A stretch of 64,000 nt of DNA from Phallusia mammillata (lineage: Eukaryota). Shown piece by piece: positions 9,701-45,615 of this stretch. A program made the position numbers and the translations under genes. Under the pieces are notes generated by a model. It made no database searches. It was not told the origin of the DNA and saw only the letters and a list, made by a program, of their open reading frames with translations. Location of the stretch: positions 29,016,001-29,080,000 of the forward strand of contig OZ281497.1 in NCBI GenBank assembly GCA_965637545.1, read 5' to 3'. Position 1 is the stretch's first letter. Every line of letters begins with the position of its first letter.

Positions 9701-12700
9701 ATTGTATATATTTATGTATATTTTCTGAAAAAAAGAACCTCTACATTGCCAAAACTATCAAACTTCGGAAAGGATAGACTACAGAAAAAGTCTGGCTGAC
9801 CTGACACAAGCATTTCAAAATTTATGTGTAATGTATAATTGGGGTCTTAAAAAAGTTATTTCAGATTGACGCAGTGCATTCCAGTGTGTCAGATTGACAC
9901 AGTGCAATCCAAAAATGTTTTAATGTGTATGTATTGTCTCAAAAGATTATGAAAAGTATTGTTACATTTTAAAGATCTGTTAACTTGTGAAACTAATATG
10001 TGCAACTTGTTTCATATTGGTGATAAAATGTGATTAATGTTTGTTTAATAAAAATGAAATGGTTTTGGATATTTGTGGAAAGAAAAGACAACAAATTAAA
10101 ATTGACTGCTTGCTTATGGTTAAACACTATGCCTGCCTTTTTTAAAGTCATCATTATGCTTGCCATTTTCCAGTTTATTAATTACACATATACGACCACA
10201 AGACTCACGAAGGCAGTGCAATTCGGGAGGCTTATACAGGACACTTTAACGGATACACTGCAGAAAATGAAAAATTTGGTGTACTAGGTAAATTGGTAGT
10301 GAACAAAAAGGTTTTTCAGGCCTAAATTTTTTTAATGACAACAAGGTCAAGGCAACCAGTAGTTTTGACACCAATATAAACAACACTAGTTTTTGACAAG
10401 GACATTAATGTGAGGTTTCCAACATGTTTATACAATCATACTATACCAAAATCTAAAATAGAATGATGGTATTTCATTTTATTATTTCCAACTATTGACC
10501 ACGAAAGCTTTCGTTTACACATTTTAAATATCTTTTACAGAACCTCAGGATTTGATACATGTGTTTTGCCCCACCATAACTTAAATGAGTGCTTTTTGGA
10601 AGGAGGTGCATAGGCAATTATTGTTCTGTACTTGCCAAAAACAATTTTAGGACAGATTGGAGAGGTCAACAAATCAACTGACATGGGCCTATATGCTATT
10701 AAAAAAAAATAGCACCCACAAACACTTGGTTACAAGAAAATAACACAGCATTTGAACTGGGTATTTGTATAATCCAAAGGTTGTTAACAACAAAAGATGT
10801 CAACTCATTACAGAATTGATAGTACACTGCAAAAAATAATGGCTCACTATTGAGCCATAAGGACCAACCTTTAACTGTACTGACTCATTTTTCCCTTATT
10901 TTTTGACTGGAAATGAGCCGAAACCATTTTTAATTTTCAGCCAACAAACTTTTAGTGTGAAAGTAGAAACATGGCTCATTACAAGCCGATACTGGATTGA
11001 TATAAGCCATGTTTAAAAAGATTTTTAAAATGGGCCATTCCAAACCATTTTTGGCTTGAATTCAGCCTTTTTTATTTTTTGGCTTCATAGCTAGCTAATT
11101 TTTTTTGCAGTGTAAGATTATACTGCTGATCACTGTAAACATTTTGGAAGTTTAAGCAGTATGTTGATTTCAGATATTTATGTCATTTAAAGTATGGTAA
11201 GTGATGGTGATTATAGGTCTCTATAGCCATACAGCCTTTTAAAAGTAGCTTTAAATATAAAAGACCAGCCCTCATTGTTGCCATTACATGCAAGCATTGC
11301 ATTTTAGTAAACATGAACACTTCTATCTTGCTGCTTGCTTTCACGATGCGATGGTATCTAAAACAAAATTGCATATATTTCTCTGAAAGTAGCCTGTGTG
11401 CTGCTGTGCATAATATCAGTAATTTTACAAAGAGAAAAATATAATCTATCTAGTTTATTGCAATACATTATATACTGGTCATTACCTGCACTTTTGTACT
11501 GAATGCTTCCATTTTCGCCATATTTTCAAAATAAAATATTATTTTGACTTGAAAAAGCAGTGACGACCTTACAACATCAAAAATACGCAAAGTAAACCAC
11601 TACGCAACGGCCTACGTGACGTAACGAAAGTCCGCAAAAATCCGCCCCTCTGATTGGTTAAAAAAGCCCCATATGCGAAATAGATTACATTTTGGAAATA
11701 TGCTTACCGCAACCGACACCACATGGTCCGTCACCATTTTTACCACATCCATCCGACCAAGCCAACCACCCTCAGAAACCAACACTCAACAAGGTAGTGA
11801 CTTTTCGCGAGTGTTTCTCACCAAAAAAACTATTTTCGTAGTCATCTGCATTACTAAAGTAAATGTCATTCGTTTTGCTTTAAGTTTTACTTTTAGGAAC
11901 ACCATACACCGGCTGTCAACTATATTAATTAGGCCAAACTTGTTTGCGCTTTAACAGGAAGCACTACCAACGTCACCGTAGCATTAGCAGCATGTGGGAG
12001 TGTAGTCATCATAATCTGCATTGTCGTTGCCATTGTGACGTTGCAAAAACGTAGAAGGAGGTAAGCGGCATGTTTGCAAAAGCAAAATGCTCGATATTGC
12101 TACAAAAAAAAACAAATTTTCGTTTTAGAAGTAACTTGTTTTTAATTTCTTAAATAAAGTTAACAAATGTACACATTTATATTGTCGACTTGTCAATAAA
12201 TGCATTTAATTCCCAGGCGCGAATTGTCAGTGAAGTTGGAAGAGGAAAGTGCATATGTCAACATAAGTAAGTACATTTGTTCAAAGCAGAGTAACAGTAA
12301 ATCAAAATACAACCATAGATAGATTGAACAAATATTTTGTCAAGCTTTACCGTCGACTTATACGAACCAATAACATTGATTTGGACTTGTCGGAATTCTT
12401 TATTTTTTGTCGTTTTTTGCACTTTATCTGTTTCCAGTGGTGACAAAAATAACACAAAGTGTGTTGTATTTGTTGTAAACAGGTGGAAATCGCCAGGTTG
12501 CAGAAACACACAACAATCCACCGATCTATGTCAATAACTCTGTACAATCCACGACGTCACCACAACAACCTGATGACATAGATCCTTATTACGTCGCCCA
12601 CAAACAAGGTACCGATGACGCAATCATTAATTCATAATATGGTGTTCATAGATGGGCAACATATACAGTAGAGTAGATGAACGAATATAGGCCTCGTCTA

Positions 12701-13125
12701 TTTGTAGTCAATTTTCATGTTTTATTATAAATCTGCTTTTTGGGCAGAAAATGTTTTGCAAATTGCGCTTGTTTTTTGTTTTTTTGTTATATATTTCGAC
12801 AATCGTCGGCAGTCCGAGAACTAAAAATCGCCCTTTGTCGTTCACGGGATTCGAACCCAGCATAATTACGGGGACGAAACCCGATCAGGTTTTGTATGTG
12901 GGTCAGGCGCGCCAGGCCATTCGGTCAAGTTCCCGCCCCCACTTGTTTGCACTTGTTTTATTAAATGGAATCCATTGTCCGTTTGTAGAAACCCACAAAG
13001 AACCCCGACCAACTTACGTCAATAACTCCGTACAACCAACCACGTCACAATCACAAGCTGATGACGACCATCCCTATTGCGTCAGCCAAGAACGACGTCC
13101 AGAGTACATAACATTTGATCCTTAA
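6638..13125 (+). CDS. C-type lectin-mucin-TM receptor copy 1; exons 6638-6851, 7507-7743, 8378-8599+11704-11793 (split by MULE), 11958-12060 (TM), 12217-12266, 12483-12608, 12989-13125
   Basis: Signal MNSNIFLILLMCAMS; CTLD FYIGA..FQWNDGS..QWYLNQPNNFGGKENC..WFDVPC..RYICEK; Thr-rich stalk; TM VTVALAACGSVVIIICIVVAIVTL-QKRRRR; tail SAYVNI, PIYVNN, PYYV, PTYVNN, EYITFDP*. Exon phases are consistent. Confidence 0.85.
8600..11703. mobile_element. Non-autonomous Mutator-like (MULE) DNA transposon, 3104 bp, inserted in the mucin exon
   Basis: Perfect 53-bp TIR GCATATTTCCAAAATGTAATCTATTTCGCATATGGGGCTTTTTTAACCAATCA (8600-8652 / 11651-11703); 9-bp TSD TTACCGCAA. A 9-bp TSD with G-starting TIRs fits MULE. 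No intact ORF. Confidence 0.85.
10825..11112. mobile_element. CACTG-ended MITE (EnSpm/CACTA-like), nested in the MULE
   Basis: Termini CACTGCAAAAAA...TTTTTTGCAGTG, with TA on both flanks. Confidence 0.7.
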
Positions 13126-14007
13126 TTAATAAGTTACTCTTTCTATTTTTGATTGCTAAAATACAGATATTTCTTCCCACCTTTTCTTTTTTAGTTTTAT
13201 TCTTTAGAACTCGCTGGTTAAAATGGATCTTCATAAGATTTAAAATGCATACCACAACAATCACGTTTCAGCAATTCCCACGGAAACTTTATTAGTTTAA
13301 CTCTGCCTCCAGCAAAATGTCCCCTTCGTCAATACATCCATACTTACCTGACATGTACTTGTATTTTTTGTATGAAAGCGGGCAGCAGTTATGGCTGAGC
13401 CACCCTCATTTTTGTTTTAGAAAACCCGAGTTACAGCCAAACTTGGTGGAATTGCTGCACAGATGGGACATAGTGTGAATTCAGTTTTATGTCCTCTTTG
13501 CTTAGTGTAAAGCGCAAACCGAACCAGAAAAGCCAGTCTCAAATTACAACTCTGTAACATCGGTGGTGGCGAGGAACGTAGTATATTCAAAATGTTGGAC
13601 TGGACACACATTAACTGCATGGTTAACAAAACAAAACAAAAAACTGTCTGTAAAATTTGGACGGGCCTTCGGTCGTTTATTTCCCGCCGCAGCACAGAGC
13701 CCCTCGGTAAGCTAACCTCGGTATGTGCAAAGCTGCTAAACCGTTTGCTTCAGTCTGGACACTAGTTGTCAGTATTGGGATCAAATAGACATAGAATAAC
13801 TAAAGCTGCTCTGAGCTAAAAAAAAACTGCTCTGAGCTGTTTCCATACTCTTGGCGTACACGTGTGTATGAAAGTAAAATATTTATTTTGTTTTCCGAAT
13901 CGCCTATTTTCAACGTTTGCAAAAAGTAAAATGTTAAACAGTCAAAACAAACGGATAATTACACTTAGTAAACTCAAACTTAAAACTTGCACTCATTATA
14001 ACATACT

Positions 14008-31460: not shown

Positions 31461-32766
31461 CTGAAACATATAAACACAAAGCTGAACAGATTCCATATAA
31501 GTAATTCTTGGAAACATCTGTAATGTGGTTCAAAGGAATCTTTTCGTGTCCCAGTTTATGTGTTACATTGTAGGGGCAGCCTTGTATTACGGCAGAGGCT
31601 TATTTTTACGAGTCTATATTTAAAATTTACTCCTTGATTGGTGGGCCAACAGGACGATAAAGCCATTAATGGTGGGTATAAAGGTAATGTCCAGAAAGAC
31701 TGATACAATTTTAGAGACATGGTCTTTTACTGAATTTTATTGCACCATTTTTGACCCTGCGCAATATGTGTGTGTTACTCCGATCCAGGTTAATAGTAGA
31801 CACAATTCATTTTAATTCACAAAAAAAAAAACATTGTAGCTATAGTGCTCAATAGGTAAAGAGTTTTAATGTCGTAGGATTAGATGGACAAAAAAAGAAT
31901 TAATTTTCCCGTAATTGGCACAACCATTGAGAAAGCTTTCTGCACTATTGTTTACTGGGGATGAAAAACTTGTTCCATAAAAAAAGTTATGAAAAAATAG
32001 ATGATAATCTATTGTTTCACGAATAATAGTTGGTTGAAATCTTCAACAGCAAGGTAGCATATGAAACCTGACAACGATACAAGATTTGGGACTATTGAGT
32101 TAAACTTTTTGTTACATTTCATTGAAGAAAGCTAGCGTTAACCAAACTAAAAAAGTATTTTTAATTAGCAGACCAGTGTTTGTAATGAATATGGTACTGT
32201 TGATGTACAACCTGGAATGAAAATATTTTGAATAAGTATTTTAGTTAAAACATTTGTGTTTCACCATAAATTTTTATTCAATTTGCATGTAAGCTAATAC
32301 TTTTTTTTAAAGATTGTTAGTTTTAAGTGGACTTTCTAAAACTTCATTAAACAACATTCAAGGTTTAGATTTAGAAAATCTTCTAATTATAAGGTAGTGT
32401 TAAAAATTATTTGTTCAGTTGTTTGGGGTTTGCGGCTATTTAGTATCAAAATCTCATTTCTAACCTTGCAGTGTTTCGAACCCTGCATTGCTGCAGTGCG
32501 CTTTGCTTTGATTGTGCTGCAACACCCGATCCGTCTGATTTCAGACGCTTGAAACTGTCGAATTCTGGATAATCCCGTGCCTTTATGCTGTCGTATTATA
32601 ATCTGTGTTAAGGATTCTTTCTTTAAAAGAAATGCGCTGCACAGTGCACGGAAAAACATAGAAGGGAATTACCCTTTATGCTATCCGTCGGCTGCGGCTC
32701 TTAAATGACAAATGATATCGTTGAAATTGCTGAAACCTGTAACGTGCAAAAATAAAAAAAATAAAA

Positions 32767-35700
32767 ATGAGAAGTAAATGTGGAAGGTCTGCAAGTGGAT
32801 ATAACTTGTTTTGCGCTTCACTGAAAGGTGGTGGTAAGTAGTCATTAATTGTATAGTCATTTAAAAGTAAAGTTGTATAGGGATACTGTCAGTGGTGGGT
32901 TTCAACTTTTTTATCACTTTTTTATCAGCCGGTGCTATCACAAAAGTCATATTTTTTGCTGATTTTGTTACAAAAAGTCTATTGACAGTAACCAGTAATG
33001 GCAACCAGTTCGCAGATCCCATAAAATTTTATGGACCGATTGCAACCAGCTGAATCCCACCACTGGGCTCTGGATACAGTCATGCAATGGTTCTTTGACA
33101 CATTAATAGTGGAATACGCCCAATGACAGCATATGTGCCACACAAACCCCTGTTTATTTAGGTGTTTAGCTATCATAGCCCAATGGTCTACTTTTTGTTT
33201 ATCTGGAACTTTGGTGCAGAAAAATTTAATCATACACATGTCCATTCATTACCCCCGGACCTTTCCCCTTTGAATTCTTAAGTAAACAGTTTATTGCTCA
33301 AGTGACTATATGGCCAATGTTTGGCTCTCACTAATTCTGTTGCTCAGTTGTTATGTTCCTTATTATTTGGTTTGTGCAATTTGTTTAAATCAAAGCATGA
33401 CAAATAAAACAGTGAAATTAGTAAACACCTGTGGACCTGAACTACTGTGCCATTGGTGTGTGTTTATCTGATCTTTTTTCTGTTATATATGACATATGTC
33501 GGTGGGTGAAAAAAGAGTTAAGAAAACTAAACAATTACAAATTATATATCCAGTTACTACTTCCTGGAGTATAACCATTAACAAAGCTTTGCTGTTGAAT
33601 TATATTTAATAATATTTCAACCTTTACATATATTTATACAAGATTAATATGCTGATTCAACTGGTACTTTTTGACTTATAAGACATTTAGATTATGAAAA
33701 ACATGTTTATGTGGTTCCCCAGGCTGTTTACCGCTTAGGCTCTTAATAGTTAAACTTGAACTCTTCCAGTCACTGTCAACATGTATATATTGAAGCTATT
33801 TACGAAGTTACAGAAGTTACAGTGTAGCTGTAAACGTTTTTTCAAAAGAATTTTTTAAATTAAATATTGGCATAGTGACATTGAGTCTTGACTCGCCTTG
33901 TTTTTAAGCAGTTGCTTGGTCATAGTGGATGCAGTTTCCCTGTGGCTTATCCCAATTTGCGGCATCAAACTGATATGGCATGACATGTCAATTAAGCCTG
34001 TTACTTCCAATAAACTGCAGTACATTAAATGTAGCTACACTAGCCTATACAGTCAACTGTATGAGTTTGATAGAGTGGGCACTGTCTGCAGCTTAACTTC
34101 TAAATTGTTTCAGAAATTTCTACATTTGGTAAAGAATGGCAGAATTTATCAGAAAGTGAAAAAAATACTTGGAAGGAAAAAGCCAAGCAATCAATTCAAC
34201 CTAATATGACAGAAAGACAACAGAAATCATACATAAAAAGACAGACAGACATGATTACACACTGTGTGAGTGACATTATGATGTTATAAACAAGTAATAA
34301 GTTTGAGAAATGCTTAAGTAGGTTGTAGATTTTAGTGAAGAGTTAACTACAATATCTAATGCAGAACACTATCATACTAGTGCATTCTCTTAGAGCAAAA
34401 ATCTGGAGAAAGTAAATGTAGAGGTTGTGGGAATGGTGCTGAAGAGTGGTGTGTTGCAAGTATTTGGAACTAATAAATCTGTGCAATGGTTGGAAAACAC
34501 AATTGATGTCCAACGACAATTTGTATGCAATTCCCACTTAGGTAATGATAAATATTTGTTAAGCTAAAAAGAAGAAGCAGTTTTCCATGCTTGTATACCT
34601 CTTTTTATTTACAGATGGTTGTAACACAGTTGAGAATACTTTAAGAGAAAACTTACGTAGAATGGTCCAAGATTTATTTAATTCAAAGTACTGTAAGTTG
34701 TTTTTACTTACATAGTTTTAACAATTTTTTTAGCTGCAATGTTTAATTACAGCGGAAGCTGTTGGCAAAGCTTCTCGAGTTCCGTATAAGAAAAGAAATT
34801 ACACAGTTACTGGTTTGCCGGAAGGTGTCTCTTTTTCAAAACCTTCGAAATATGGGGTTCTTAAACTCAAACAAATTTTGTCAGTTAAGGAAAACATAAT
34901 GTTTACTGTTGACCGGTATGTATACACTTTTGTTTTTATATCATTGATCAATGTTGGTTTGTCATTTACTGTAAAAACTGATGTATTATTGTGTTTTTAG
35001 GATTGCTACAAATATAGAATTGGGAAAAAACTCTGAAGGTAATCTATCTCTGCAACATAACAAAACACCACTCTTACTAAGGTTTTCATTTTAAATACAG
35101 TAAAATGGCATATTTAAAATTACCAGTATATATAATGAAATCATTTTCACACATTCAATTTCCTACTTTTTTAATGATATTATTGTATTTAAGATGATCA
35201 AATTCCTAATGACGCTCAACAAAATGTTACCATGGAAGGAGATGATCAACATGTTGCTGAGGGTAATTTCATTTATTTCAGTTACTATTTGATAAACTGC
35301 CAAACGCTATTTCATAGCAGTACATCTAGTAAACATGCACTTATAATGGGCTAGTTATGTAAAATTTTTGTTTAATTACAGAGCAAGAGGAAGAAAATAC
35401 TGTTACTGCTGAAAGTTCAAACGAAACTAACAAAGAACACCTACAAAGTCAACCGGGTAAAATATGTGTTTTAAATCTTTTAGTGTTTTGCTGTAATATG
35501 CTTTGTGTTCCAGTGTGCCAAATGCAAACAAAATCATGACGCTGGTGGCCACAAGTGCAATAAGCATACATAGATGTAGGCTTACATTACAGATAACAGA
35601 AACTTAAGAAAGGTTAATTCCAATATTAATTATTTTTAACTTCGCTTAAGCTCATTGTGACACAAAAAAGGAAAGCTGAATAAAAGGACGTATCTATTTT

Positions 35701-36102
35701 TGTCCATTGATGTGTAACAGCTAATTTTGTAACCCTTTTGTCTATTTACGTATGTTTTAACATTTAGATGGAAGGAGATTAAAGAGAAGAAAAAAGGGAA
35801 AACCATTTTCAAAAAGAAAAGTCTCTAAATCAAAATGTAAGGTCATGTTACATTGTCAGAACTTTTTTAAATGACGTACTTACGTTTTGTAACACTTATG
35901 TTCGTCACTATCACAAATCGAATGCTTGGTTGTTTTTGTAGGGACCCCAAAACAACTAGACACTCTACGCAATGAGCCTGAAAACTATTGCTCGGGTTGC
36001 GGAGAATTTTATTACACCAGCACACAAGAAAATGAAGACTGGGTTATGTGCGCTTGTGGTTCATTTCATCACGAGTTTTCGTGCCAGTGCCACTGCAAGT
36101 AG
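32767..36102 (+). CDS. Transposon accessory protein, ~339 aa: HMG box + GTF2I-like I-repeat + acidic linker + basic NLS + PHD-like finger; exons 32767-32833, 34114-34265, 34394-34541, 34615-34692, 34753-34915, 35001-35038, 35194-35262, 35382-35456, 35768-35836, 35942-36102
   Basis: Ten GT-AG exons join in frame with no stop (1020 nt). HMG: RSASGYNLFC..GKEWQNLSESEKNTWKEKAK. I-repeat: LRRMVQDLFNSKYSEAVG..VPY..VTGLPEGVSFSKPSKYGVLKLKQILSVKENIMFTV. C-terminus: YCSGCGEFYY..EDWVMCACGSFHHEFSC. Confidence 0.88.
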
Positions 36103-36940
36103 GAAGTAGCCCAATACATTGCATTCAATAAAAGAAAAAAATCGTTTTACTTTGTGCATTCGTTGTTTTTTTACTAAGATTGGGAAAAGTGAAAAAAGGG
36201 CTAAAACCGCAAACCGGCGTACCCCACTTAGCAAGAGTACCTCACTTAACCCATGCCATAACAGGAAATAAGCGATGGGACTAAATAGGGCCTTAAACAA
36301 GGGCTAAGCATGCATTTTCGCGGTTGGTATATGCAGACTAAGTGACCTTAGCGTAAGCTAAGCGAGCTAAGTGTTGGCTGCGCAGGCTGAGGTAGCTCGC
36401 AGTTTTAACGGGATCCAAGACTTGTGAAAAACATAAAATAGATTAAAATGATGTGATGTTGAGGCATGGATATGTGACAATAAAGAGAGTAAACATATTC
36501 AAAAGTAATGGAACGTACTGTCGTTTCAGTTTTTATGAGGTAAACAATATCAACAACACCAATAGCCAGCAACAAATTACAAATTTCCAGGTGTTAGTTA
36601 CTCACTGTACCATAACAATGGTTTATTACGTCACTATTGATAGTTGTTGACGAATTTAAAAACAATGATTATTCAACGCACTTAAGGTTTTGACTGGTAG
36701 TAAAAATTAACGCAATTCCTTCCCTTGCATGCAACCTGTATATAAACACCCAAAAGGAAGGGTAATGAATAAAATTTGTTGACAACTTGTAGTGTTACAA
36801 ATCAAAACGCCCAACATTGCCAGTTCAATTAGTTTAAATACCTGGTTTGGCAAAGAATAGTGGCCTGCCATAAGTCATAATGCGTGTCTGTTTTTTTAGT
36901 TTAAATTTACCTCAGTTTGTTTGTGTGAGCCGGTCGTTCT

Positions 36941-38586
36941 ATCTTTAACCGTACGTGTTTTGTAGTCGATTGGGCTTAGCCGCACAGACAACTAGTAATA
37001 ATTCAGGCGGTCGTGCCCTTCATTTCATGACGATGCACGCTTCTCATTTTTGATTCTCTTATTGAAGTAACCTGAAACTTTGCAAGCTGTTGGTGACTGC
37101 AATTATAAATTGGCTAGTGAAAACCGTTTCGTTTTATCTTTAACCGTTCGTGTTTTGTAGTCGATTGGGCTTAGCCGCACAGACAACTAGTAATAATTCA
37201 GGCGGTCGTGCCCTTCATTTCATGACGATGCACGCTTCTCATTTTTGATTCGCTCATTGAAGTAACCTGAAACTTTGCAAGCTGTTGGTGACTGCAATTA
37301 TAAATTGGCTAGTGAAAACTGTTTCGTTTTATCTTTAACGGTTCGTGTTTTGTAGTCGATTGGGCTTAGTCGCACAGACAACTAGTAATAATTCAGGCGG
37401 TCGTGCCCTTCATTTCATGACGATGCACGCTTCTCATTTTTGATTCGCTCATTGAAGTAACCTGAAACTTTGCAAGCTATTGGTGACTGCAATTATAAAT
37501 TGGCTAGTGAAAACCGTTTCGTTTTATCTTTAACCGTTCGTGTTTTGTAGTCGATTGGGCTTAGCCGCACAGACAACTAGTAATAATTCAGGCGGTCGTG
37601 CCCTTCATTTCATGACGATGCACGCTTCTCATTTTTGATTCGCTTATTGAAGTAACCTGAAACTTTGCAAGCTATTGGTGACTGCAATTATAAATTGGCT
37701 AGTGAAAACCGTTTCGTTTTATCTTTAACCGTTCGTGTTTTGTAGTCGATTGGGCTTAGCCGCACAGACAACTAATAATAATGATTCGGACGGTCGTGCC
37801 CTTCATTTCATGACGATGCACGCTTTTCATTTTTGATTCGCTTATTGAAGTAACCTGAAACTTTGCAAGCTGTTGGTGACTGCAATTATAAATTGGCTAG
37901 TGAAAACCGTTTCGTTTTATCTTTAACCGTTCGTGTTTTGTAGTCGATTGGGCTTAGCCGCACAGACAACTAATAATAATGATTCGGACGGTCGTGCCCT
38001 TCATTTCATGACGATGCACGCTTTTCATTTTTGATTCGCTTATTGAAGTAACCTGAAACTTTGCAAGCTGTTGGTGACTGCAATTATAAATTGGCTAGTG
38101 AAAACCGTTTCGTTTTATCTTTAACCGTTCGTGTTTTGTAGTCGATTGGGCTTAGCCGCACAGACAACTAGTAATAATTCAGGCGGTCGTGCCCTTCATT
38201 TCATGACGATGCACGCTTTTCATTTTTGATTCGCTCATTGAAGTAACCTGAAGCGTTGCAAGCTGTTGATGACTGCAATTATAAATTGGCTAGTGAAAAC
38301 CGTTTCGTTTTATCTTTAACCGTTCGTGTTTTGTAGTCGATTGGGCTTAGCCGCACAGACAACTAGTAATAATTCAGGCGGTCGTGCCCTTCATTTCATG
38401 ACGATGCACGCTTTTCATTTTTGATTCGCTCATTGAAGTAACCTGAAGCGTTGCAAGCTGTTGATGACTGCAATTATAAATTGGCTAGTGAAAACCGTTT
38501 CGTTTTATCTTTAACCGTTCGTGTTTTGTAGTCGATTGGGCTTAGCCGCACAGACAATTAATAATAATGATTCGGGCGGTCGTGCC
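36941..38586. repeat. Tandem array of a 195-bp unit (198 bp in two units), ~8.4 copies
   Basis: Unit starts (atctttaac) at 36941, 37136, 37331, 37526, 37721, 37919, 38117, 38312 and 38507. Confidence 0.95.
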
Positions 38587-38857
38587 CGGTAGAGCTACTA
38601 ACACCATAACGAGAATCAGAACTTCGCTTTCACAAGGGGGCGTAAAGAGCTGAATTTTTACTTAGCGGCTATAAATGGGTTGGGAAATAATTACATACAA
38701 TTTTTGCATTAGTAACTAATTTTTGGGTTAGTTTTATTGAATTTTAAGTGCTAATACCTTACTCCGATCCTAATAGCCCTAACCGTGAACATTTTTGGAG
38801 ATACAACTAACCACATTTGGGTGTGTGATTCTCGTTATGGTGTTAGTAGCTCTACCG
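38587..38857. mobile_element. MITE-like element, 271 bp, abutting the tandem array
   Basis: Perfect 32-bp TIR CGGTAGAGCTACTAACACCATAACGAGAATCA; no TSD visible. Confidence 0.8.
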
Positions 38858-39347
38858 TTTACTACAGAGAGAATTTAAAATTTGCACAAAAGCTTTACAA
38901 TCGCATATTTAGAAATTTTCTGACAAGAAGGCGACCAAAATAATGCATGATTGAAACATATAGAACACAGATAGTAAAACAGTTAATTGCGCGGTCGCCA
39001 ACTTTAATTTCCAACAAAAAAGTAACATAGCAGACAGACAGTGACGCAACAATCGCAATCAAACGAATAATGCTTTACAGTTTACACTTTAAGCCTTGCA
39101 TTTATTTGTAACTATATTTCGTATTGGTTGACTTGCTTTGATGAAACGAATATTAAACATTTAAAAAACGTTTTGCCATAAACGAGGCAATCTACCACAT
39201 GTATAAACCTTATTTGGACATTTCAAAGTTAACCGAAAAGCACTGGAGCAATAGAATTACTTAAACATAAATCACAGTTGAAAAACAAAACACAAAACAC
39301 ACAAAAAAGAACACCAGCACTACAATTTAACTTTACAAATCAAGCTA

Positions 39348-42300
39348 TTAATCCTCATCATCACTTTCATCCGTTGAATAGTCAGCACATTCTGGTTCCA
39401 AAAAAGGAATAATTTGAGGAGTTTCAAGGGAGTTTGAGGAAGTAGGCAATTCAAGATGTTCAGCGAAACTGCCTCTTAAGTTTTGCACAAGGCTTTGAAC
39501 TTTAAATTTTTGGCAAATCAAGTAGGAAGATAAATTACCATTGATTACAATTTCTCTCTCAAGTTGACAAATTAGTTGCTCATTAAACTGTAATACACTA
39601 GTCATTTCCCTTTTTACTATGACAATTTCTTCCTTTGACCTTTCCATAACAAAGTATCTGTCAAGTATTTTTTGAAAAGAATCTTGCTGTGTAGCATTTG
39701 GTATGTCATTAGGCTTTACAAAAATATCTGCAAGTGTTACTCTTTCAGGGCATTTGGTGACTTCAATGCCTGACATTGTGTTGTACTTCTTGATTAACTT
39801 TTTTGTTACCAATGTGACCCTTTTCATATTTTTGGATATCTTGTCAAAAATTGCTTGTCCAGCTATAGGAGGCAAAAAGAATAGTTTGTTCACTTGGCTG
39901 CAATATCCCCTATTCTTCTACTATACTATTTTCTGCTGTAATTATGATTAGTATTTGTTTCCAACATGATTTGGTAAACCAATCTATCTGAAAACTTACA
40001 TGAATACTTCCGTATTAAAGTTGAAAGGAAACTGCGTTCAAAGTTCTGACATTGCAACTTAACCAACAACTCCTGCCTTTTCTTTTCTGCTGCAGTCACT
40101 AGTAACAAGTCTAGTTCTTTCAAACTTAAGTTCTGAACACTTCCTTTTTTTCTTGATCCTTCAAGTTGTTTCTCTAACCTGTACAAAAGGCATTAGTATA
40201 GTGCTGTTATATTTGGCTAATTAAAGTTTTTCCTAAAACTGTAATATGCTAAATTTATACTACCTGGCAACCTGGCCTGTCAAGTCTAAGACCTCTGTAC
40301 AATCTGAATTTCCTTGAGTTTCAAGTGCATTAATACGAATTCTGTAAACAAAGAAAAATTGAGTGCTATTTATAATTGTTCAAACTGCAGTAAAACCATT
40401 TTAAACCTGTTTGCATTTAAATCGTGCATTTTTAATGCATATTCCTCTTTGTGTGAAAGTTTTAGCTCTTTGCATGCATCACTGATGACATAAGGGCATT
40501 TAGAAGCATTTTCTACCTCTGAAAGAGACAGTCCTCCTGTAAAAGTTTGTATTGGGTAAATCAATAAATTGACAAAATTAAGCTATAGTATATCAACTAA
40601 AATGCTGTTAAAAATAACCTTCAGTGTTGTTTTAAAAAAATACAGACCTGGATAGGATTCCATCATCAGAGAGAGCTCAGCTTCAGCCTGATGCAATGCA
40701 ACTTTAGCATTACTTAACCTTTGAACCAATATAGACCCTGCAAAGTGTTTTTTTAATAAATAAATTTTTACATATTTTTTCATATTATACTTAACCAACT
40801 TAAACATTGTTCTACCCAGGTTAAACTTTATTTTTCTTCCATAATGTAGGAGTGCATCAGTTAGTAAATCAATTCTATGTTCTGGTTTCATTTCTTTTGT
40901 TATTTTGGCAAATTTCCGTAGATATGACCAAAGTCTTTCAACAGTTTCTCCCTCTGTTAGTCCAAATCCAACTTTTCGCCTAGGGCTGTATTGCATCTGG
41001 ATTTTAATTAAATTTGAGTGTTAGAATTACTGTTTACTTTGTTTTACATGTAAAACCTCAGGTCATTACCTGGCATGCAACATTATGACCATAGCCATGA
41101 AAAATAGGCACAGCAAAAATGAACTTGTTTAAATTTGATGCAGGTAGTCGAATCTAAACCAATATATGAGTATATCTGGTTCGTAGTTAAAAAAGAAAAA
41201 CCCATCCCTGGCATACATACCTTTATGTGTTCCTGTAGTTTACATGCTATATCATAAAATATCTTTATGTCTGCATTTTTGTTTTGTTCCATAATTTTTT
41301 TCAAACAGAAAACTGGATAACCTAGCCTGGGCGCATTGACAGGCTAGCATTGAAAAAAACAGCAAAATGATTATAAAGCAGTTACTAACCTCTCCCCATG
41401 TTTCATATCAACAAACAATTTCGGATATGCATGCTTACAACATACACCAAAAATTCCTTTTACATCAAGTTTAGCTATTTTGTTGACAGAGCGGATTTTG
41501 GTTCCAGCTTTAAAATCACTACACATCTACACAAAAACAAAAACGTACTCACAGATTAGATAAATATGTTCTTAAATGTGTTTTTATTTGGATTTTACTG
41601 TTTTTGATGCTGTGTCATGAGCATAGCTGTTGACAAAGCCATCCACTTGCTCTTCATTAACAAAAAACAGGCCATTATGATGGGGAGAAGCACTACTTTT
41701 GCCAGCAGCCCTTCTTCTTACTAAGCCAAAATTTCCATCAAAGCAATACATATCTTCACATGTTGGATCCTAAACGTATTAAATTTCCTCATCAATTTCC
41801 AACTATGCCACTTGCTAATCTTTTGGTAACAAGTAAAACAACTACCCCTTTGCACGCTGGACATTGGGACCCATTGTCATTCAAATTTTGTAAAATTGAG
41901 GGCAGGTTGTTTTGAATTTGATAGACATGGTGTCTGTAAGATTCAAGGACTTCATTTAGCAAAATCTTCGAAAGGTCTTTTATCTGCTAAGTTTAAACAG
42001 CTTAAAAGTTTATCCTTTCAAGACTACCATAGATGTACATTTACCAAACAATTATATCCTGGTGTATTTTCATGCAACATTGTCATTGCAATGCAAAATC
42101 CATGAGTGGAAACCTGTTGTTCGAGACTAAGGGTACGGATAAATTCCATTAAATTAATGCTCACGGCTACCTTTGGGGAAACTGGTGAGCATGGCCATAA
42201 ATTGTACCTTAAAAGAGTGGCACTTTCCTGCTCACAGGAGCAAAATTCTGCTACTGCCAAGTGTTGAAATCCTATAAACAATATAAATTCAATTTTGAAA

Positions 42301-42911
42301 AGGTCATTGCTTTAAATGCACTGTGATAAATCACCTTTACTGTCTATTACAGTTAGTTTCTTTTTGTGCAATGTTGAGCAATGATGGCCATCACTTCGAT
42401 GCAAACAAACATCGTTTAGTTTTTTTTTGACAAACATGTTGTCCTAAATGAAATTTTGCATGAAATGTTAAATAAATTCAAAATCAAGAAAACAGCATAC
42501 CTGCCAAACATCTGGTCTATGGAATAGAACAAAGCAATGGACCTCCTCCCAGCATGAAACACAATAATAGGCATTCCAACCACAATCTTGGCATCTCAAC
42601 CCGTCTGTTTTAAAGTCCAAGCTAATTTTACATCGTGAACAGACACATCTTTCAGGATAACGAAAATTGCCTATTTCAACATTAAGGAGGTCTTTTTCCA
42701 ATTCCCTCCACCTTAGACTTAAAGTGGATCTTTTTTCGGCATAAGAAGAAGGTTCACAAGGGAAAGTACTGACTTCATCCTGAACTGAACTCTTCGTAGT
42801 ATCGGATTCATGCCTATTTTGCGATAAATATGAGCTACAAAACAGTAAGCACTTCTTCTTTTTAACACTTTTTATTTTGTACAGTGACGATATTTTTCTT
42901 CACCTAGGCAT
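39348..42911 (-). CDS. KDZ transposase with N-terminal CxC zinc-binding region, ~852 codons, 14 exons: 42911-42501, 42443-42335, 42271-42045, 41986-41846, 41769-41599, 41526-41390, 41326-41221, 41153-41070, 40996-40816, 40737-40648, 40536-40407, 40341-40264, 40178-40000, 39862-39348
   Basis: Motifs RCQDCG..YCVSCWEEVH..FHRPDVW, FCSCE..LLRYNLWP.SP, CPAC, CFDGNFGLVRR, CKHAYP..DMKHGER, FYDIAC, VPIFHGYGH..CQ, GFGLTEGETVERLWSYL. All phases are consistent. The only lesion seen is a TGA at codon 4 (MPR*RK). Confidence 0.92.
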
Positions 42912-43485
42912 AGCAAGACCAAGAAAAAACTAACAGCTGAAATACGTATGCCTGAATATGTGGAAGATTGATAAAATTGTCATTAGATGGTGAAGGTAAT
43001 TCGGAAATGCAGCCTTTAGGTTTAGAGTTAGGGAAACTGCCCATCCAAAACCGGGAACCACCCTACACAAAACAGGCTAAAGTTGCGACTTTTAAGCGTA
43101 GAATCCCTAATACAGGTTATAATACAACAGCATCAAGGCCCGAGATTACTCAGAATTCGACAGTTTCAAGCGTCTAAATCAGACGGATCGGGTGGCTGCA
43201 AATATGTGACGTAATATTAACACAGGAAGGTTGGATCGGCACTGAATGCTGACGTCAGTTAACATACTACTTGTTGCAATTTTTATTAATTATATGTGGT
43301 CATCGAAATTATTGTTTGAAAGTAAAGACAAACGCTCAAAGCTGTATACGTAATTGAAGTATTTTTGACTGTACTTGTCCATTAGGGTGGCCACCACACG
43401 CACCTTCGATCGCATTGTGAGTTACCATATTTTTTGTTATTTTCGTTGATAGTTAGTACAGTTAATCATTACAAAATTGTCAAAA

Positions 43486-43546
43486 ATGTCACTTCAACTC
43501 CTAAAGTTTGCTCTTTTTGTCTGTTCGTTGAGTTTGCTGCACAAAG
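43486..43546 (+). CDS. Signal-peptide first exon, paralog A (MSLQLLKFALFVCSLSLLHK|G)
   Basis: ATG to phase-1 GTAAGT donor, 61 nt; homologous exons at 46006 and 61947. Confidence 0.65.
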
Positions 43547-43599
43547 GTAAGTGGTTTTAAAAAAAATTTCTTCAAAAATGTCTACTGATAGAAGTAGAG

Positions 43600-43969
43600 T
43601 TCTTTGCAGTTTCGTGATCAAGCGCTGCAACCACGTAGAAATACCTGGTGCTTTCTGATGTAATGCTTCTCAGGGCAAATTGTGCTTCAGCCTGTTGAAA
43701 CCATACGCGTGGATTGGAGGTCCAAAAAGTTGGCAATTTCAATGTAACTGCATGTTGCTGTTGGGCTTCTTCTGGATTAGACATAGTATTCTTACAAATG
43801 CCGTTTGTAAGCTTCGGGGTCACCAAATGTGGCGAGCGTTAGCTGTTTATTTCGCGACGTCCAAAATAGAATGAATAAATACAAAGTGTCATACAAGCGA
43901 AGAAAGAGAACACGAGAAAAGGGCACATTTAACACGCTTTGATAAATGCGGGTCGGCAGAGTCGCTACA
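43600..43969 (-). mobile_element. Ty3/Gypsy LTR retrotransposon 5' relic: short LTR (~43969-43828), PBS, gag start
   Basis: TGTAGCG...CGCCACA followed by PBS TGGTGACCCCGA (matches the tRNA-Trp 3' end); gag reads MSNPEE..LKLPTFWTSNPRVWFQQAEAQFALRSIT..RYFYVVAAL. Confidence 0.8.
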
Positions 43970-44169
43970 GTCGCACAATATTGTAGCGAAATTTTATTTG
44001 CTTGTTATTTTTTGTCACCGTCACTTATTGTTTTCGTTCTTTTTCGTTGTGGCACCTTAATTACGTTTTTGTGTTATGGCACCCTCGCTGCTTCCCCTTA
44101 GGAGTGATTAGTTGTGAAAGCGTTGATTGCGACGGAATGTGCCTTCCTGTTCCGCATGCTTTGAATAGG

Positions 44170-44442
44170 GCGTCACTAGTCGATAATATGGCTTTTCTCT
44201 GGGCGCCGTGAAACGTGGTGGTGTTGGTGTTGGTATAGATGGTGGGTTGCCACGTGCCCGGTGTAACTTTGCTTTTACATTGTTTTAAATATAAGTCGCG
44301 CCCATAAGCTAAACCAGTGTGAGGGAGTATAATTGGCTTTAGTGGTGAGCCGTTATTGCAGGGTTCTGGACCGGTAGCAAATTAAGTAAGCAGGCTTGGT
44401 GCATACGATCGATTTATCAGGCCTGTCGAAATAATTCGGTAA
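44170..44442. repeat. Dispersed repeat, inverted copy of 14008-14262
   Basis: Reverse-complement match to 14008-14262. Confidence 0.8.
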
Positions 44443-44524
44443 CAATATCATGCAAACCTAATTTTTAATTTAATAATTTTTCACCATTCATACCATCATC
44501 CGGCAACGAGTGTTCAAAATCTAA

Positions 44525-45615
44525 CTCTTTGCCGGTTGGGTTATCCCTCTCCTCATTGCCATCACCTACTTGAACTCTGGCCAATTCGGCTACAACCGAT
44601 GCTGGCTCCCTGCCAACACCGCCATCCTTGTTGCCACGGTGATAGTTCCCATAGCAAGCTTTTTTATCTGCACCATTTCGCTGGCTCTACTGACGGTAGC
44701 CCTGATAGTGAAGAGACGAATCACACCTCTTTGCGTCATGCAGCGATCAACATGACGATGGATGACGTCGACATGGATCACGTGATTCAAATGTGGCTTG
44801 AACACTTTCTGGTGGGCGCGGTCCTCATTCTTCCATGGGCTATATTTTTTATGCCAGGTATGTGTTTTTTTTATGACATGGGACGAAGTAGTTTTTTACA
44901 TGCACAAAATGTGCATGTATCACGGCAGAGTCTGGTATTAGGAACAGCTTTGTCACCAAAACACATGTTCATTTACTAGATAGTCCAACCAACTTTTCAC
45001 GGCAATGTTTCAACTAATATTAAGTAGTCAACCTACGTTCTGGTGAAAAATCCTATTTTGCGCCCAGTGTTTTCTTTTATCACCCAAACTAGGGTTATAT
45101 ATTCCTAGCTGAAACGGGTTTTGTTCACAGGGCAGTCAACCGTTAAGAGCTGCCTGTACACAGTGTGCAATTTTCGCTAACAACTTATTTACGTACGTTT
45201 AGGTTACAACAGCTTGGCGGCTAATCTGCAAAATATCTACACCGCTTTCGTCTTTATGGCCATCCAAGGGATTCTAGTCTTCATTATCTACGTCATAGTA
45301 AGCCCTGATGTCAGAACGGCCCTGTTTGGCACAAACAAGTATTCGAGCACCTACAGCCTCTACTGGTACTGACCACAACAAAGCGGAGATAATTTGCCGA
45401 TCGAGAATTACACAGTGTATACTCGGGATAATCTGGATGAGCGAGAGAATGACCACGGGAAACCGGAGGACGGAGAGCTGGAGAGGACATCCAGACAACA
45501 GACGTAGCAGAACGCAGAAGAAAGTGAGCATGAAGCACAAAACAGCTTTACATCATTAGAACAACGAAAACAGCATGTTGGGCAAGAGTGGAGAGAATAC
45601 AACTCAAAAAAGTAG
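44525..45615 (+). pseudogene. Adhesion/secretin-class GPCR fragment (TM4-TM7 + acidic tail); exons ~44525-44857 and 45203-~45615
   Basis: Reads LFAGWVIPLLIAITYL..GYNRCWL..VIVPI; frameshift; FLVGAVLILPWAIFF; MAIQGILVFIIYVIVSPDVR. The tail has a further frameshift and a stop. Confidence 0.75.

What the first reader, a model, noticed from the sequence alone, without database searches (positions are those of the whole stretch)
34615..34915. TFII-I (GTF2I) I-repeat inside a transposon: candidate mobile origin of a vertebrate transcription-factor domain
Seen: exons 4-5 encode LRRMVQDLFNSKYSEAVG-KASRVPY-KKRNYTVTGLPEGVSFSKPSKYGVLKLKQILSVKENIMFTV. Established, from memory: human TFII-I repeats read LRK.V..LF..K..EALG...VPY.....V.GLPE...F..P..YG...L..I.....I.F.I. 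The GTF2I/GTF2IRD1/GTF2IRD2 family (Williams-Beuren region) is regarded as essentially vertebrate. Inference: the I-repeat may have been domesticated from KDZ accessory genes, paralleling the KDZ-derived HMGXB3.
Basis: partly seen in the sequence, partly recalled or inferred. Interest (0 to 1): 0.88.

Follow-up and report, generated by a model that had tools for sequence, protein, structure and literature searches.

The report
Transposon gene carrying a TFII-I repeat
A sea-squirt jumping gene (a KDZ DNA transposon) carries an expressed helper gene with the same two-part DNA-binding module as the human Williams-syndrome factors TFII-I and GTF2IRD1, and soft corals have the same gene pair, so that vertebrate factor family and this transposon gene share an origin whose direction is still open.

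Summary
Exons at 34615-34692 and 34753-34915 (+) encode a true GTF2I-type I-repeat (Pfam PF02946, 71 bits against a cut-off of 27). The fold matches all ten solved I-repeat structures.

The repeat belongs to a 10-exon, 339-aa gene of the ascidian Phallusia mammillata. RNA contigs from two studies confirm every intron.

The gene lies tail to tail with an intron-split KDZ transposase. Both sit inside a 10,672-bp element (32523-43194) with 107-nt terminal inverted repeats and a 7-bp target duplication.

The same pair, with a related transposase (38-65% identical in blocks), occurs at six complete loci plus one cut by a contig end in two octocorals, where the gene is multicopy.

Homology to vertebrate TFII-I proteins goes beyond the repeat. 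It includes the N-terminal domain before repeat 1 (hhalign 94.9%, E 4e-8) and a phase-1 intron at the same codon.

The domain is not vertebrate-only: cnidarians, echinoderms and molluscs have it. The domain tree does not resolve whether the transposon gave the module to vertebrates or took it. Distribution favours a mobile origin; this is not shown.

The parts
32523..43194 (.). Whole KDZ-type DNA transposon, 10,672 bp, holding two convergent genes
   Evidence: TIRs start exactly at 32523 and 43194. DNA contigs of run X1 and run X21 break exactly at 32523.
32523..32629 (+). Left terminal inverted repeat (about 107 nt)
   Evidence: 19 nt are a perfect inverted match and 90 nt match at 84% to 43089-43194; alignment. 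Word depth of the bin 32422-32608 that holds the left TIR is about 1150, against about 16-58 in most flanking bins (119 in the first bin) and 27-42 in the element's interior, in DNA run X1.
43089..43194 (-). Right terminal inverted repeat
32516..32522 (.). Target-site duplication GCTGCAA, left copy
   Evidence: Read directly; 7 of 7 bases identical to 43195-43201.
43195..43201 (.). Target-site duplication GCTGCAA, right copy
32767..36102 (+). Accessory gene, 10 exons, 339 aa (P0011). Exons: 32767-32833, 34114-34265, 34394-34541, 34615-34692, 34753-34915, 35001-35038, 35194-35262, 35382-35456, 35768-35836, 35942-36102.
   Evidence: All introns are GT-AG and the frame is open. The product is identical to P0011. 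All nine joints are seen in RNA contigs of runs X4 and X12, plus an in-frame exon 1 to exon 4 isoform.
32767..34265 (+). Exons 1-2: short, degenerate HMG box (residues about 5-49)
   Evidence: Pfam HMG_box E 1.4e-3, 19.4 bits, below the cut-off of 25.4. The octocoral relative P0040 scores 24.8 bits. Alignment A1.
34394..34541 (+). Exon 3: domain homologous to the N-terminal region that precedes repeat 1 in GTF2I and GTF2IRD1
   Evidence: A profile built from transposon proteins only hits vertebrate N-termini at E 2e-5 to 3e-3 with Z = 1e5. hhalign of the transposon-only profile against a vertebrate-only profile: probability 94.9%, E 4.1e-8, 62 columns. Foldseek aligns model residues 2-141 to residues about 30-200 of GTF2I, GTF2IRD1 and GTF2IRD2.
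34653..34915 (+). I-repeat (residues 136-203), split by the 60-nt phase-1 intron 34693-34752
35942..36102 (+). Exon 10: C-terminal Cys/His finger (CxxC...CxC...HH...CxCxC). It follows an acidic linker and a basic NLS-like run in exons 7-9.
   Evidence: Read from the translation. No Pfam hit at E <= 0.1. Not studied further.
32890..33065 (.). High-copy short element (MITE-like) nested in intron 1
   Evidence: 18-nt inverted ends (pair I18). Word depth about 33,000-45,000 in DNA run X1.
36934..38587 (.). 195-bp tandem array, 8.4 copies, between the two genes
39348..42701 (-). KDZ transposase gene, intron-split. The stop codon is at 39348-39350. The start exon is not defined.
   Evidence: ORF pieces hit Pfam CxC2/CxC1 (42281-42024, E 3.5e-10) and KDZ PF18758 profile positions 4-213 (41751-40583). 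A continuous GT-AG spliced frame of about 860 aa can be drawn, but its boundaries are unverified and wrong in at least one place. The pieces are 38-65% identical to the octocoral KDZ genes beside I-repeat genes.

Best explanation
The flagged stretch encodes a genuine TFII-I-type I-repeat. It is part of the accessory (non-transposase) gene of a KDZ-superfamily DNA transposon in the ascidian Phallusia mammillata.

Shown: the element (32523-43194) has 107-nt TIRs, a 7-bp target duplication, an intron-split KDZ transposase gene on the minus strand and, tail to tail with it, an expressed and correctly spliced 339-aa gene. The protein reads: short HMG box, then a domain homologous to the N-terminal region of TFII-I/GTF2IRD1, then one I-repeat, then an acidic linker and NLS-like run, then a Cys/His finger. 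The same gene pair, with a related transposase, recurs in octocorals, where the I-repeat gene is multicopy. So this is a conserved accessory gene of one KDZ lineage, not a one-off passenger.

Inferred: the protein is the element's DNA- and chromatin-binding partner. It would recognise the element's ends or choose chromatin targets and bring in or regulate the transposase, as the Myb-like second protein does for PIF/Harbinger elements. Relatives that swap the tail for a chromodomain fit a chromatin-directed role.

Shown: vertebrate GTF2I, GTF2IRD1 and GTF2IRD2 share with it a colinear two-domain module (N-terminal domain plus repeat 1) and a phase-1 intron at the same codon. They therefore share ancestry at the DNA level.

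Inferred, about even odds: the vertebrate family arose by domestication of such a transposon gene, followed by internal repeat duplication.
For: I-repeat: Pfam 71 bits over the full profile. Ten solved I-repeats are found by sequence. An AlphaFold model (pLDDT 89.6) has all ten solved GTF2I domains as its top ten Foldseek PDB hits, E 1e-6 to 1e-4.

Gene: 10 GT-AG exons identical to P0011. All introns are seen in RNA contigs from two studies.

Transposon: TIRs, TSD, CxC and KDZ Pfam hits. The left-TIR bin has word depth about 20-70 times that of most flanking bins and the interior, and contigs break at 32523.

Recurrence: an I-repeat gene (+) with a KDZ gene (-) downstream, its near end about 2-3.5 kb from the I-repeat coding sequence, at L002, L004, L005, L006 and L007 (Dendronephthya) and L012 (Xenia) (exon positions). 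L008 is cut off at the first transposase exon. The window's transposase pieces match those genes at 38-65% identity. The 90%-identity cluster of P0039 holds 16 members from at least 10 LOC ids.

Two-domain homology.

Shared phase-1 intron after the KY codon in Phallusia, three octocoral genes, both repeats of a sea-urchin gene and two repeats of a fish GTF2IRD1.

Transposon-borne repeats lie outside every vertebrate repeat clade; the R1 clade of GTF2I plus GTF2IRD1 has 99/97 support.

No paper in the searchable library links GTF2I with KDZ.
Against: The direction of transfer is unresolved. Non-vertebrate repeats, vertebrate R1 and vertebrate R2-6 meet at one node, and deep supports are weak (92/59, 79/41).

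In Phallusia the interior of the element has only flank-like depth, so it is single or low copy. The two TIR arms differ by about 12%. RNA contigs start outside the left TIR (32396 in X4, 32517 in X6-nt-before-TIR terms in X12). This copy may be driven from flanking DNA and may no longer move.

The transposase start exon and exact splicing are not established, and its expression was not examined.

The TSD is 7 bp, whereas Zisupton is reported to make 8 bp (PMC12730594).

No KDZ gene lies within 10 kb of the sea-urchin I-repeat gene (L003) or of three metagenome contigs (L009-L011).

The proposed molecular role rests on analogy only.
Confidence: 0.6

Rival explanations
1. Capture from the host. 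A KDZ element in a stem-vertebrate or older animal picked up a genomic fragment (N-terminal domain plus repeat 1, with its intron) of an ancestral TFII-I-like host gene. That element lineage then spread, partly horizontally, to tunicates, cnidarians and others.
For: The unrooted tree is equally compatible with transposon repeats being sister to vertebrate R1 (bipartition 83/85). The best single identity of the Phallusia repeat is to shark GTF2IRD1 repeat 1, at 50%. DNA transposons are known to transduplicate host fragments with their introns (general knowledge). The shared intron fits DNA-level capture as well as it fits domestication.
Against: Transposon-type I-repeat proteins were seen in cnidarians, echinoderms, molluscs and a tunicate. 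The multi-repeat host genes were seen only in vertebrates. Transposon repeats are not nested in any extant paralog's R1, so a capture would have to predate the GTF2I/GTF2IRD1 split. Transposase and accessory protein are both deeply diverged between tunicate and octocoral.
Confidence: 0.25
2. In Phallusia this copy is no longer a working transposon gene. It is an immobilised element whose accessory gene is being used, or is simply transcribed, as a host gene. This is compatible with the family-level reading above.
For: Interior depth is like the flanks, so single or low copy. RNA contigs begin outside the left TIR at 32396 and 32517. At least 15 runs guessed by the tool to be RNA, from several studies, hold about the share of words expected for the exons. 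The TIR arms are only about 88% alike.
Against: Both TIRs and the TSD are intact. The transposase frame can be spliced open and keeps the CxC and KDZ motifs. TIR-like sequence is abundant in two DNA runs. DNA runs X21 and X22 of the same species label hold almost none of the gene; X21 showed zero interior depth when laid. That hints at presence/absence variation, although X21 also covers the flank poorly.
Confidence: 0.2
3. Chance neighbourhood. An ordinary host I-repeat gene merely lies beside a KDZ transposase, or was enclosed by unrelated inverted repeats.
For: Only one full copy is visible in this window.
Against: Both genes lie inside one pair of 107-nt TIRs with a matching 7-bp duplication. 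The same pairing and orientation recur at seven octocoral loci with a related transposase.
Confidence: 0.03

Closest known systems
Vertebrate TFII-I family (GTF2I, GTF2IRD1, GTF2IRD2; Williams-Beuren region)
   Same: Same I-repeat by sequence and fold. Same N-terminal domain directly before the first repeat. Same phase-1 intron after the KY codon.
   Different: One repeat instead of five or six. An added HMG box and a Cys/His finger. Encoded inside a TIR-bounded transposon beside a transposase rather than at a syntenic host locus.
KDZ (Kyakuja-Dileera-Zisupton) DNA transposons, including fungal elements that carry TET/JBP passenger genes (PMC12730594)
   Same: CxC cysteine cluster plus KDZ transposase domain, long TIRs, a target duplication, and a second gene that travels with the transposase.
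   Different: Animal hosts (tunicate, octocorals). The second gene is an HMG plus I-repeat DNA-binding protein, not a dioxygenase. The TSD read here is 7 bp, against 8 bp reported for Zisupton.
PIF/Harbinger two-gene transposons (transposase plus Myb/SANT DNA-binding protein) and their domesticated pair HARBI1/NAIF1
   Same: A working analogy only: a transposase gene paired with a separate DNA-binding protein gene. PMC12730594 notes this second protein for Harbinger-type Nuwa families. The rest is general knowledge.
   Different: Unrelated transposase superfamily and an unrelated DNA-binding fold. No experiment shows that the I-repeat protein is needed for KDZ transposition.
GTF2IRD2, an I-repeat protein fused to a Charlie8/hAT transposase (PMC10641963)
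   Same: A TFII-I family member tied to a DNA transposon. Transposon genes get the label 'GTF2IRD-like' in automatic annotation.
   Different: In GTF2IRD2 the transposon part is the hAT transposase, and the mislabelling comes from that part. Here the I-repeat itself is the transposon-borne part and the transposase is KDZ.
Zisupton-derived genes of vertebrates (PMC3424704, citing Bohne et al. 2012)
   Same: Shows that KDZ/Zisupton elements have already given rise to vertebrate host genes.
   Different: Those genes derive from the transposase.

Membership tests
GTF2I-like repeat (Pfam PF02946) | Score above the curated gathering threshold over the whole profile | tested here: met
   71 bits against 27; profile positions 1-75 of 75; residues 136-203. 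Exon 5 alone scores 51.6 bits.
GTF2I-like repeat (Pfam PF02946) | Fold of the solved I-repeat domains | tested here: met
   Model pLDDT 89.6. The top ten Foldseek PDB hits are the ten solved GTF2I domains, TM by target 0.63-0.72.
TFII-I family transcription factor | Several tandem I-repeats (five or six) | tested here: not met
   A single repeat in P0011.
TFII-I family transcription factor | Conserved N-terminal domain before repeat 1 | tested here: met
   hhalign probability 94.9%, E 4.1e-8. Foldseek aligns the model to residues about 30-200 of all three paralogs.
TFII-I family transcription factor | Stable host locus (orthology and synteny with the vertebrate genes) | tested here: not met
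   The gene lies between the TIRs of a transposon. Synteny as such is not testable with these tools.
TFII-I family transcription factor | Sequence-specific DNA binding and transcriptional regulation | not testable with these tools
   Needs binding and reporter assays.
KDZ (Kyakuja-Dileera-Zisupton) DNA transposon | Transposase with the KDZ catalytic domain and an N-terminal CxC cysteine cluster | tested here: met
   PF18758 positions 4-213 in four ORF pieces; PF18803/PF18802 at E 3.5e-10 and 9.5e-10. ESM Atlas nearest clusters are KDZ, 0.97.
KDZ (Kyakuja-Dileera-Zisupton) DNA transposon | Terminal inverted repeats | tested here: met
   About 107 nt, about 88% alike, starting exactly at both ends.
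KDZ (Kyakuja-Dileera-Zisupton) DNA transposon | Target-site duplication (8 bp reported for Zisupton) | tested here: inconclusive
   A perfect 7-bp duplication GCTGCAA flanks the TIRs. An 8-bp register does not match. Only one insertion was seen.
KDZ (Kyakuja-Dileera-Zisupton) DNA transposon | Several copies at different sites (mobility) | tested here: inconclusive
   TIR-like sequence has high word depth and contigs break at 32523, but the interior has flank-like depth in Phallusia. The related octocoral gene is clearly multicopy.
Two-gene transposon with a DNA-binding cofactor (Harbinger-like logic) | The accessory protein binds the element's ends and/or the transposase and is needed for transposition | not testable with these tools
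   Inference from domain content and the conserved pairing only.

The most novel reading that the evidence does not exclude
The vertebrate TFII-I family (GTF2I, GTF2IRD1, GTF2IRD2) descends from the accessory gene of a KDZ DNA transposon that was domesticated in the vertebrate stem. The N-terminal domain plus one I-repeat were kept, and the repeat was then multiplied by exon-pair duplication. A bolder and less likely extension is that the transposase of the same kind of element gave rise to a Zisupton-derived vertebrate gene, so that both genes of one element type were co-opted.
Probability: 0.45. Interest if true: 0.85.

Novelty: new variant of a known kind. Interest (0 to 1): 0.7.

Why it matters
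TFII-I and GTF2IRD1 are dosage-sensitive genes of the Williams-Beuren region, and the origin of their I-repeat is obscure. This locus ties that domain, its neighbouring N-terminal domain and even an intron position to a conserved accessory gene of an animal KDZ transposon lineage.

If the mobile origin holds, it would be a transcription-factor family born from a transposon's helper protein rather than from a transposase. It would also show that animal KDZ elements are two-gene systems.

Practically, 'GTF2IRD1-like' annotations in invertebrate genomes are transposon genes, not orthologues. That matters for gene-age and orthology studies.

The question becomes directly testable by a census, a rooted two-domain tree and binding assays.

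Tried and rejected
Word-index protein searches gave almost nothing. The search with P0011 and the search with alignment A1 returned two or three proteins, and the search with P0022 returned only vertebrate GTF2IRD1, so no mollusc protein id was obtained.

The exact-protein context look-up had no record for P0011, P0065, P0160 or P0072. Exaiptasia, Montipora, Acropora and the window's own annotation therefore could not be examined.

The domain tree (58 repeats, 81 columns) and the clade tests do not give a direction.

Presence/absence of the insertion is unsettled. DNA run X21 has zero depth over the interior but also covers the flank poorly. In X1 and X21 a second version of the left flank stops matching at 32510, 12 nt before the TIR. 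Whether it runs on into the right flank (an empty site) could not be checked, because the single read-laying run was used.

My splice-graph model of the transposase gives an open frame. However, it misses the exon that carries the FAVPIFHGYGHNVACQ motif and has no start exon, so I do not offer it as a gene model.

The HMGXB3 = KDZ claim could not be tested. No paper in the library holds HMGXB3 together with Zisupton; the one paper holding HMGXB3 and 'transposase' mentions it only as a neighbour of TIGD6; Iyer et al. 2014 is not held.

The ESM Atlas ranked Basidiomycota 'hypothetical protein' clusters first by features (0.88). That is below the level the tool calls more than a lead, so I did not follow it.

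P0100 and P0184, at first possible non-vertebrate or multicopy cases, turned out to be vertebrate GTF2IRD1 copies.
Full report
**What is at the coordinates.** The window is AT-rich eukaryotic DNA (GC 0.32-0.42). At 34615-34692 and 34753-34915 on the + strand lie two exons separated by a 60-nt GT-AG intron. The intron splits a Ser codon after its first base.

Exon 5 alone hits Pfam GTF2I (PF02946) at E 1.2e-13. Extending by hand, I obtained a 10-exon gene (32767-36102) with canonical splice sites throughout and an open 339-codon frame.

An exhaustive HMMER search of 1.84 billion representative proteins with exon 5 returned a 339-aa protein, P0011, that is letter-for-letter my model. [quoted passage not shown] The genome is therefore an ascidian.

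The whole protein scores 71 bits on PF02946 (cut-off 27), with residues 136-203 covering the entire profile. It also has a sub-threshold HMG box at residues 18-49. phmmer against PDB sequences finds ten solved I-repeats of GTF2I, GTF2IRD1 and GTF2IRD2, the best at E 2.9e-11.

**Expression.** About twenty public runs of the same organism hold the stretch. At least 15 runs that the tool guesses to be RNA hold 0.20-0.51 of its words; the exons make up 0.30 of the stretch. Contigs of two RNA runs from different studies show all nine introns at my coordinates. They also show an in-frame isoform joining exon 1 to exon 4, which skips 300 nt.

The RNA contigs end about 30 nt past the stop codon. Notably, they begin outside the element, at 32396 in X4 and at 32517 (6 nt before the left TIR) in X12.

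**The surroundings: a transposon.** An inverted-repeat scan finds arms at 32523-32629 and 43089-43194: 19 nt perfect plus 90 nt at 84%. Aligned, they are about 107 nt and about 88% alike, starting exactly at both outer ends. GCTGCAA flanks both ends directly. This is a 7-bp target duplication with chance about 6e-5.

On the minus strand between 42701 and 39348, a series of ORF pieces hits the CxC2/CxC1 cysteine clusters (E 3.5e-10). They also hit positions 4-213 of the 217-position KDZ transposase profile. The ESM Atlas places one piece among KDZ clusters at 0.97.

A GT-AG spliced open frame of about 860 codons can be drawn through them. Its boundaries are unverified and wrong in at least one place, and the start exon is unknown.

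In DNA run X1 the interior of the element has word depth 27-42. Most flanking bins are at about 16-58 (119 in the first bin), and the bin holding the left TIR is at about 1150. Contigs of two DNA runs begin exactly at 32523. TIR-bearing relatives are thus numerous, but the full element is single or low copy.

A 195-bp tandem array of 8.4 copies lies between the genes. A very high-copy short element sits in intron 1.

**Is the pairing accidental?** No. Among the exon-5 hits are single-repeat proteins with a shared architecture: homeodomain-like N-terminus, HMG box, a 'middle' domain, one I-repeat and a C-terminal domain. They come from anthozoans: Dendronephthya, Xenia, Exaiptasia, Desmophyllum, Acropora and Montipora.

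In Dendronephthya the 90%-identity cluster of P0039 has 16 members from at least ten LOC ids, which is a multicopy signature.

Genomic context was available for eight octocoral places. At L002, L004, L005, L006, L007 and L012 (Xenia), the I-repeat gene on the + strand is followed by a KDZ/CxC gene on the - strand. The near end of that gene lies about 2-3.5 kb beyond the last I-repeat coding exon. L008 ends at a contig edge just where the transposase begins.

The Phallusia transposase pieces match these octocoral genes at 38-65% identity, and its C-terminal ORF at 25-45%. This is one KDZ lineage with a conserved accessory gene in a tunicate and in cnidarians.

No KDZ gene lies within 10 kb of the sea-urchin gene P0022 (HMG, two I-repeats, chromodomain; L003). 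None lies near three metagenome contigs that carry the last exon of an octocoral-like gene (L009-L011).

**How far the homology with vertebrate TFII-I proteins goes.** An iterative search unexpectedly linked the 'middle' domain to the N-termini of vertebrate GTF2I/GTF2IRD1. I tested this without circularity.

- A profile built only from transposon-type proteins hits vertebrate proteins at residues about 25-90, always just before repeat 1, at E 2e-5 to 3e-3 for Z = 1e5.
- hhalign of a transposon-only profile against a vertebrate-only profile, both without the I-repeat, gives probability 94.9%, E 4.1e-8, over 62 columns.
- An AlphaFold model of residues 70-210 (pLDDT 89.6) has the ten solved GTF2I domains as its top ten PDB hits.
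- Against Swiss-Prot models it aligns over its full length to residues about 30-200 of GTF2I, GTF2IRD1 and GTF2IRD2, at E 2.5e-10 to 2e-7.
- Against AlphaFold DB clusters the same two-domain module appears in many further proteins named chromo-, BEN- or YqaJ-domain proteins. Their organisms are masked.
- ESM Atlas clusters with GTF2I plus Homeodomain (166 members, Cnidaria) and Chromo plus GTF2I (58 members, Mollusca) show the domain's wide invertebrate range.

There is also a gene-structure character. The phase-1 intron directly after the KY codon of the repeat is at the same place in several genes. These are the Phallusia gene, three octocoral genes, both repeats of the sea-urchin gene and two repeats of a fish GTF2IRD1. 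The relationship is therefore at the level of genomic DNA, not a retrocopy.

**Direction of transfer.** I built a tree of 58 repeats. All vertebrate repeats fall on one side (92/59). GTF2I and GTF2IRD1 repeat 1 form a clade (99/97). The transposon-type repeats fall on the other side (79/41).

The partition 'non-vertebrate plus R1' against 'R2-6' is also present (83/85). The three groups thus meet at one node, and the tree cannot say whether the root lies on the transposon side (domestication) or among R2-6 (capture of R1).

What the tree does exclude is a recent capture from any living vertebrate paralog. Distribution favours a mobile origin: transposon-type genes occur in cnidarians, echinoderms, molluscs and a tunicate, while multi-repeat host genes were seen only in vertebrates. 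I put this at roughly even odds.

**Likely mechanism.** Shown: the protein combines DNA-binding modules (a weak HMG box and an I-repeat) with a basic NLS-like run and a Cys/His finger. Relatives replace the tail with a chromodomain.

Inferred: it acts as the element's DNA- or chromatin-directed partner of the transposase, as in two-gene Harbinger elements. No data here test binding or requirement.

**Literature.** No paper in the searchable library holds GTF2I together with KDZ. The one paper pairing 'GTF2I-like repeat' with 'transposon' concerns mislabelled hAT transposons and GTF2IRD2, a different matter (PMC10641963).

KDZ elements with passenger genes are described in fungi, where Zisupton makes 8-bp TSDs (PMC12730594). 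Zisupton-derived genes are reported in vertebrates (PMC3424704). The HMGXB3 parallel could not be verified.

**Verdict.** This is a new variant of a known kind: an animal KDZ transposon lineage with a TFII-I-like accessory gene. It raises a credible and testable, but unproven, hypothesis about the origin of a medically relevant transcription-factor family.

Noticed in passing
window 32890-33065: A short element with 18-nt inverted ends sits in intron 1 of the I-repeat gene. Its word depth is about 33,000-45,000 in DNA run X1 and about 10,000-14,000 in X21, so it is a very high-copy MITE- or SINE-like repeat of this genome.
   Followed up: partly
window 36934-38587: A 195-bp tandem array (8.4 copies, 97% matches) lies inside the transposon between the two genes. 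Each unit carries a small ORF. Its role is unknown.
   Followed up: no
window 32832>34614 (joint): RNA contigs of two runs show an in-frame isoform that joins exon 1 to exon 4. It drops residues 23-122 (half of the HMG box and the N-terminal TFII-I-like domain) but keeps the I-repeat. Its depth is about half that of the full form.
   Followed up: partly
window 32396-32522: RNA contigs of the accessory gene begin outside the left TIR, at 32396 in X4 and 32517 in X12. Transcription of this copy may start in flanking DNA.
   Followed up: no
window 32423-32510: DNA runs X1 and X21 each hold a second version of the left flank (8 differences in 88 nt). Its match stops at 32510, 12 nt before the TIR. 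It is possibly the empty-site allele, but this could not be checked.
   Followed up: no
window 32566-32576 and 43142-43152: The left TIR holds GGATAATCC, which reads GGATTATCC on the other strand and so contains GGATTA, the core I recall for GTF2IRD1 binding. The right TIR has AGATTA at the matching place. One 6-mer in 107 nt is expected by chance about once in 20, so this is only a lead.
   Followed up: no
L007 7156-8792 and L008 10032-11668: In one Dendronephthya subfamily a 347-aa protein-kinase-like gene lies between the I-repeat gene and the KDZ transposase. It is a possible third passenger.
   Followed up: no
L009-L011 (ENA metagenome contigs): The last exon of an octocoral-like I-repeat gene (P0147; identical at three places) lies near genes with reverse transcriptase/integrase, protein-primed polB and D5-like helicase hits. 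No KDZ gene lies within 10 kb.
   Followed up: partly
L001 10001-11729: P0100 is an intronless four-repeat copy whose repeats pair one-to-one with GTF2IRD1 repeats 2-5 in the tree. It looks like a retrocopy in a vertebrate assembly (GCA_039880945.1).
   Followed up: partly
P0011 residues 121-204 vs ESM Atlas: Basidiomycota 'hypothetical protein' clusters are the nearest by language-model features (0.88, 0.80), and one reaches TM 0.50. KDZ elements abound in that phylum. Two AlphaFold DB cluster hits also carry accession prefixes that I associate with a glomeromycete. This is a lead for I-repeat-like domains in fungal KDZ elements.
   Followed up: no
window 7536-7916: This ORF reads like a C-type lectin domain (WNDGSDV...QPNNFGGKENC...). 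It was seen only in the ORF list.
   Followed up: no
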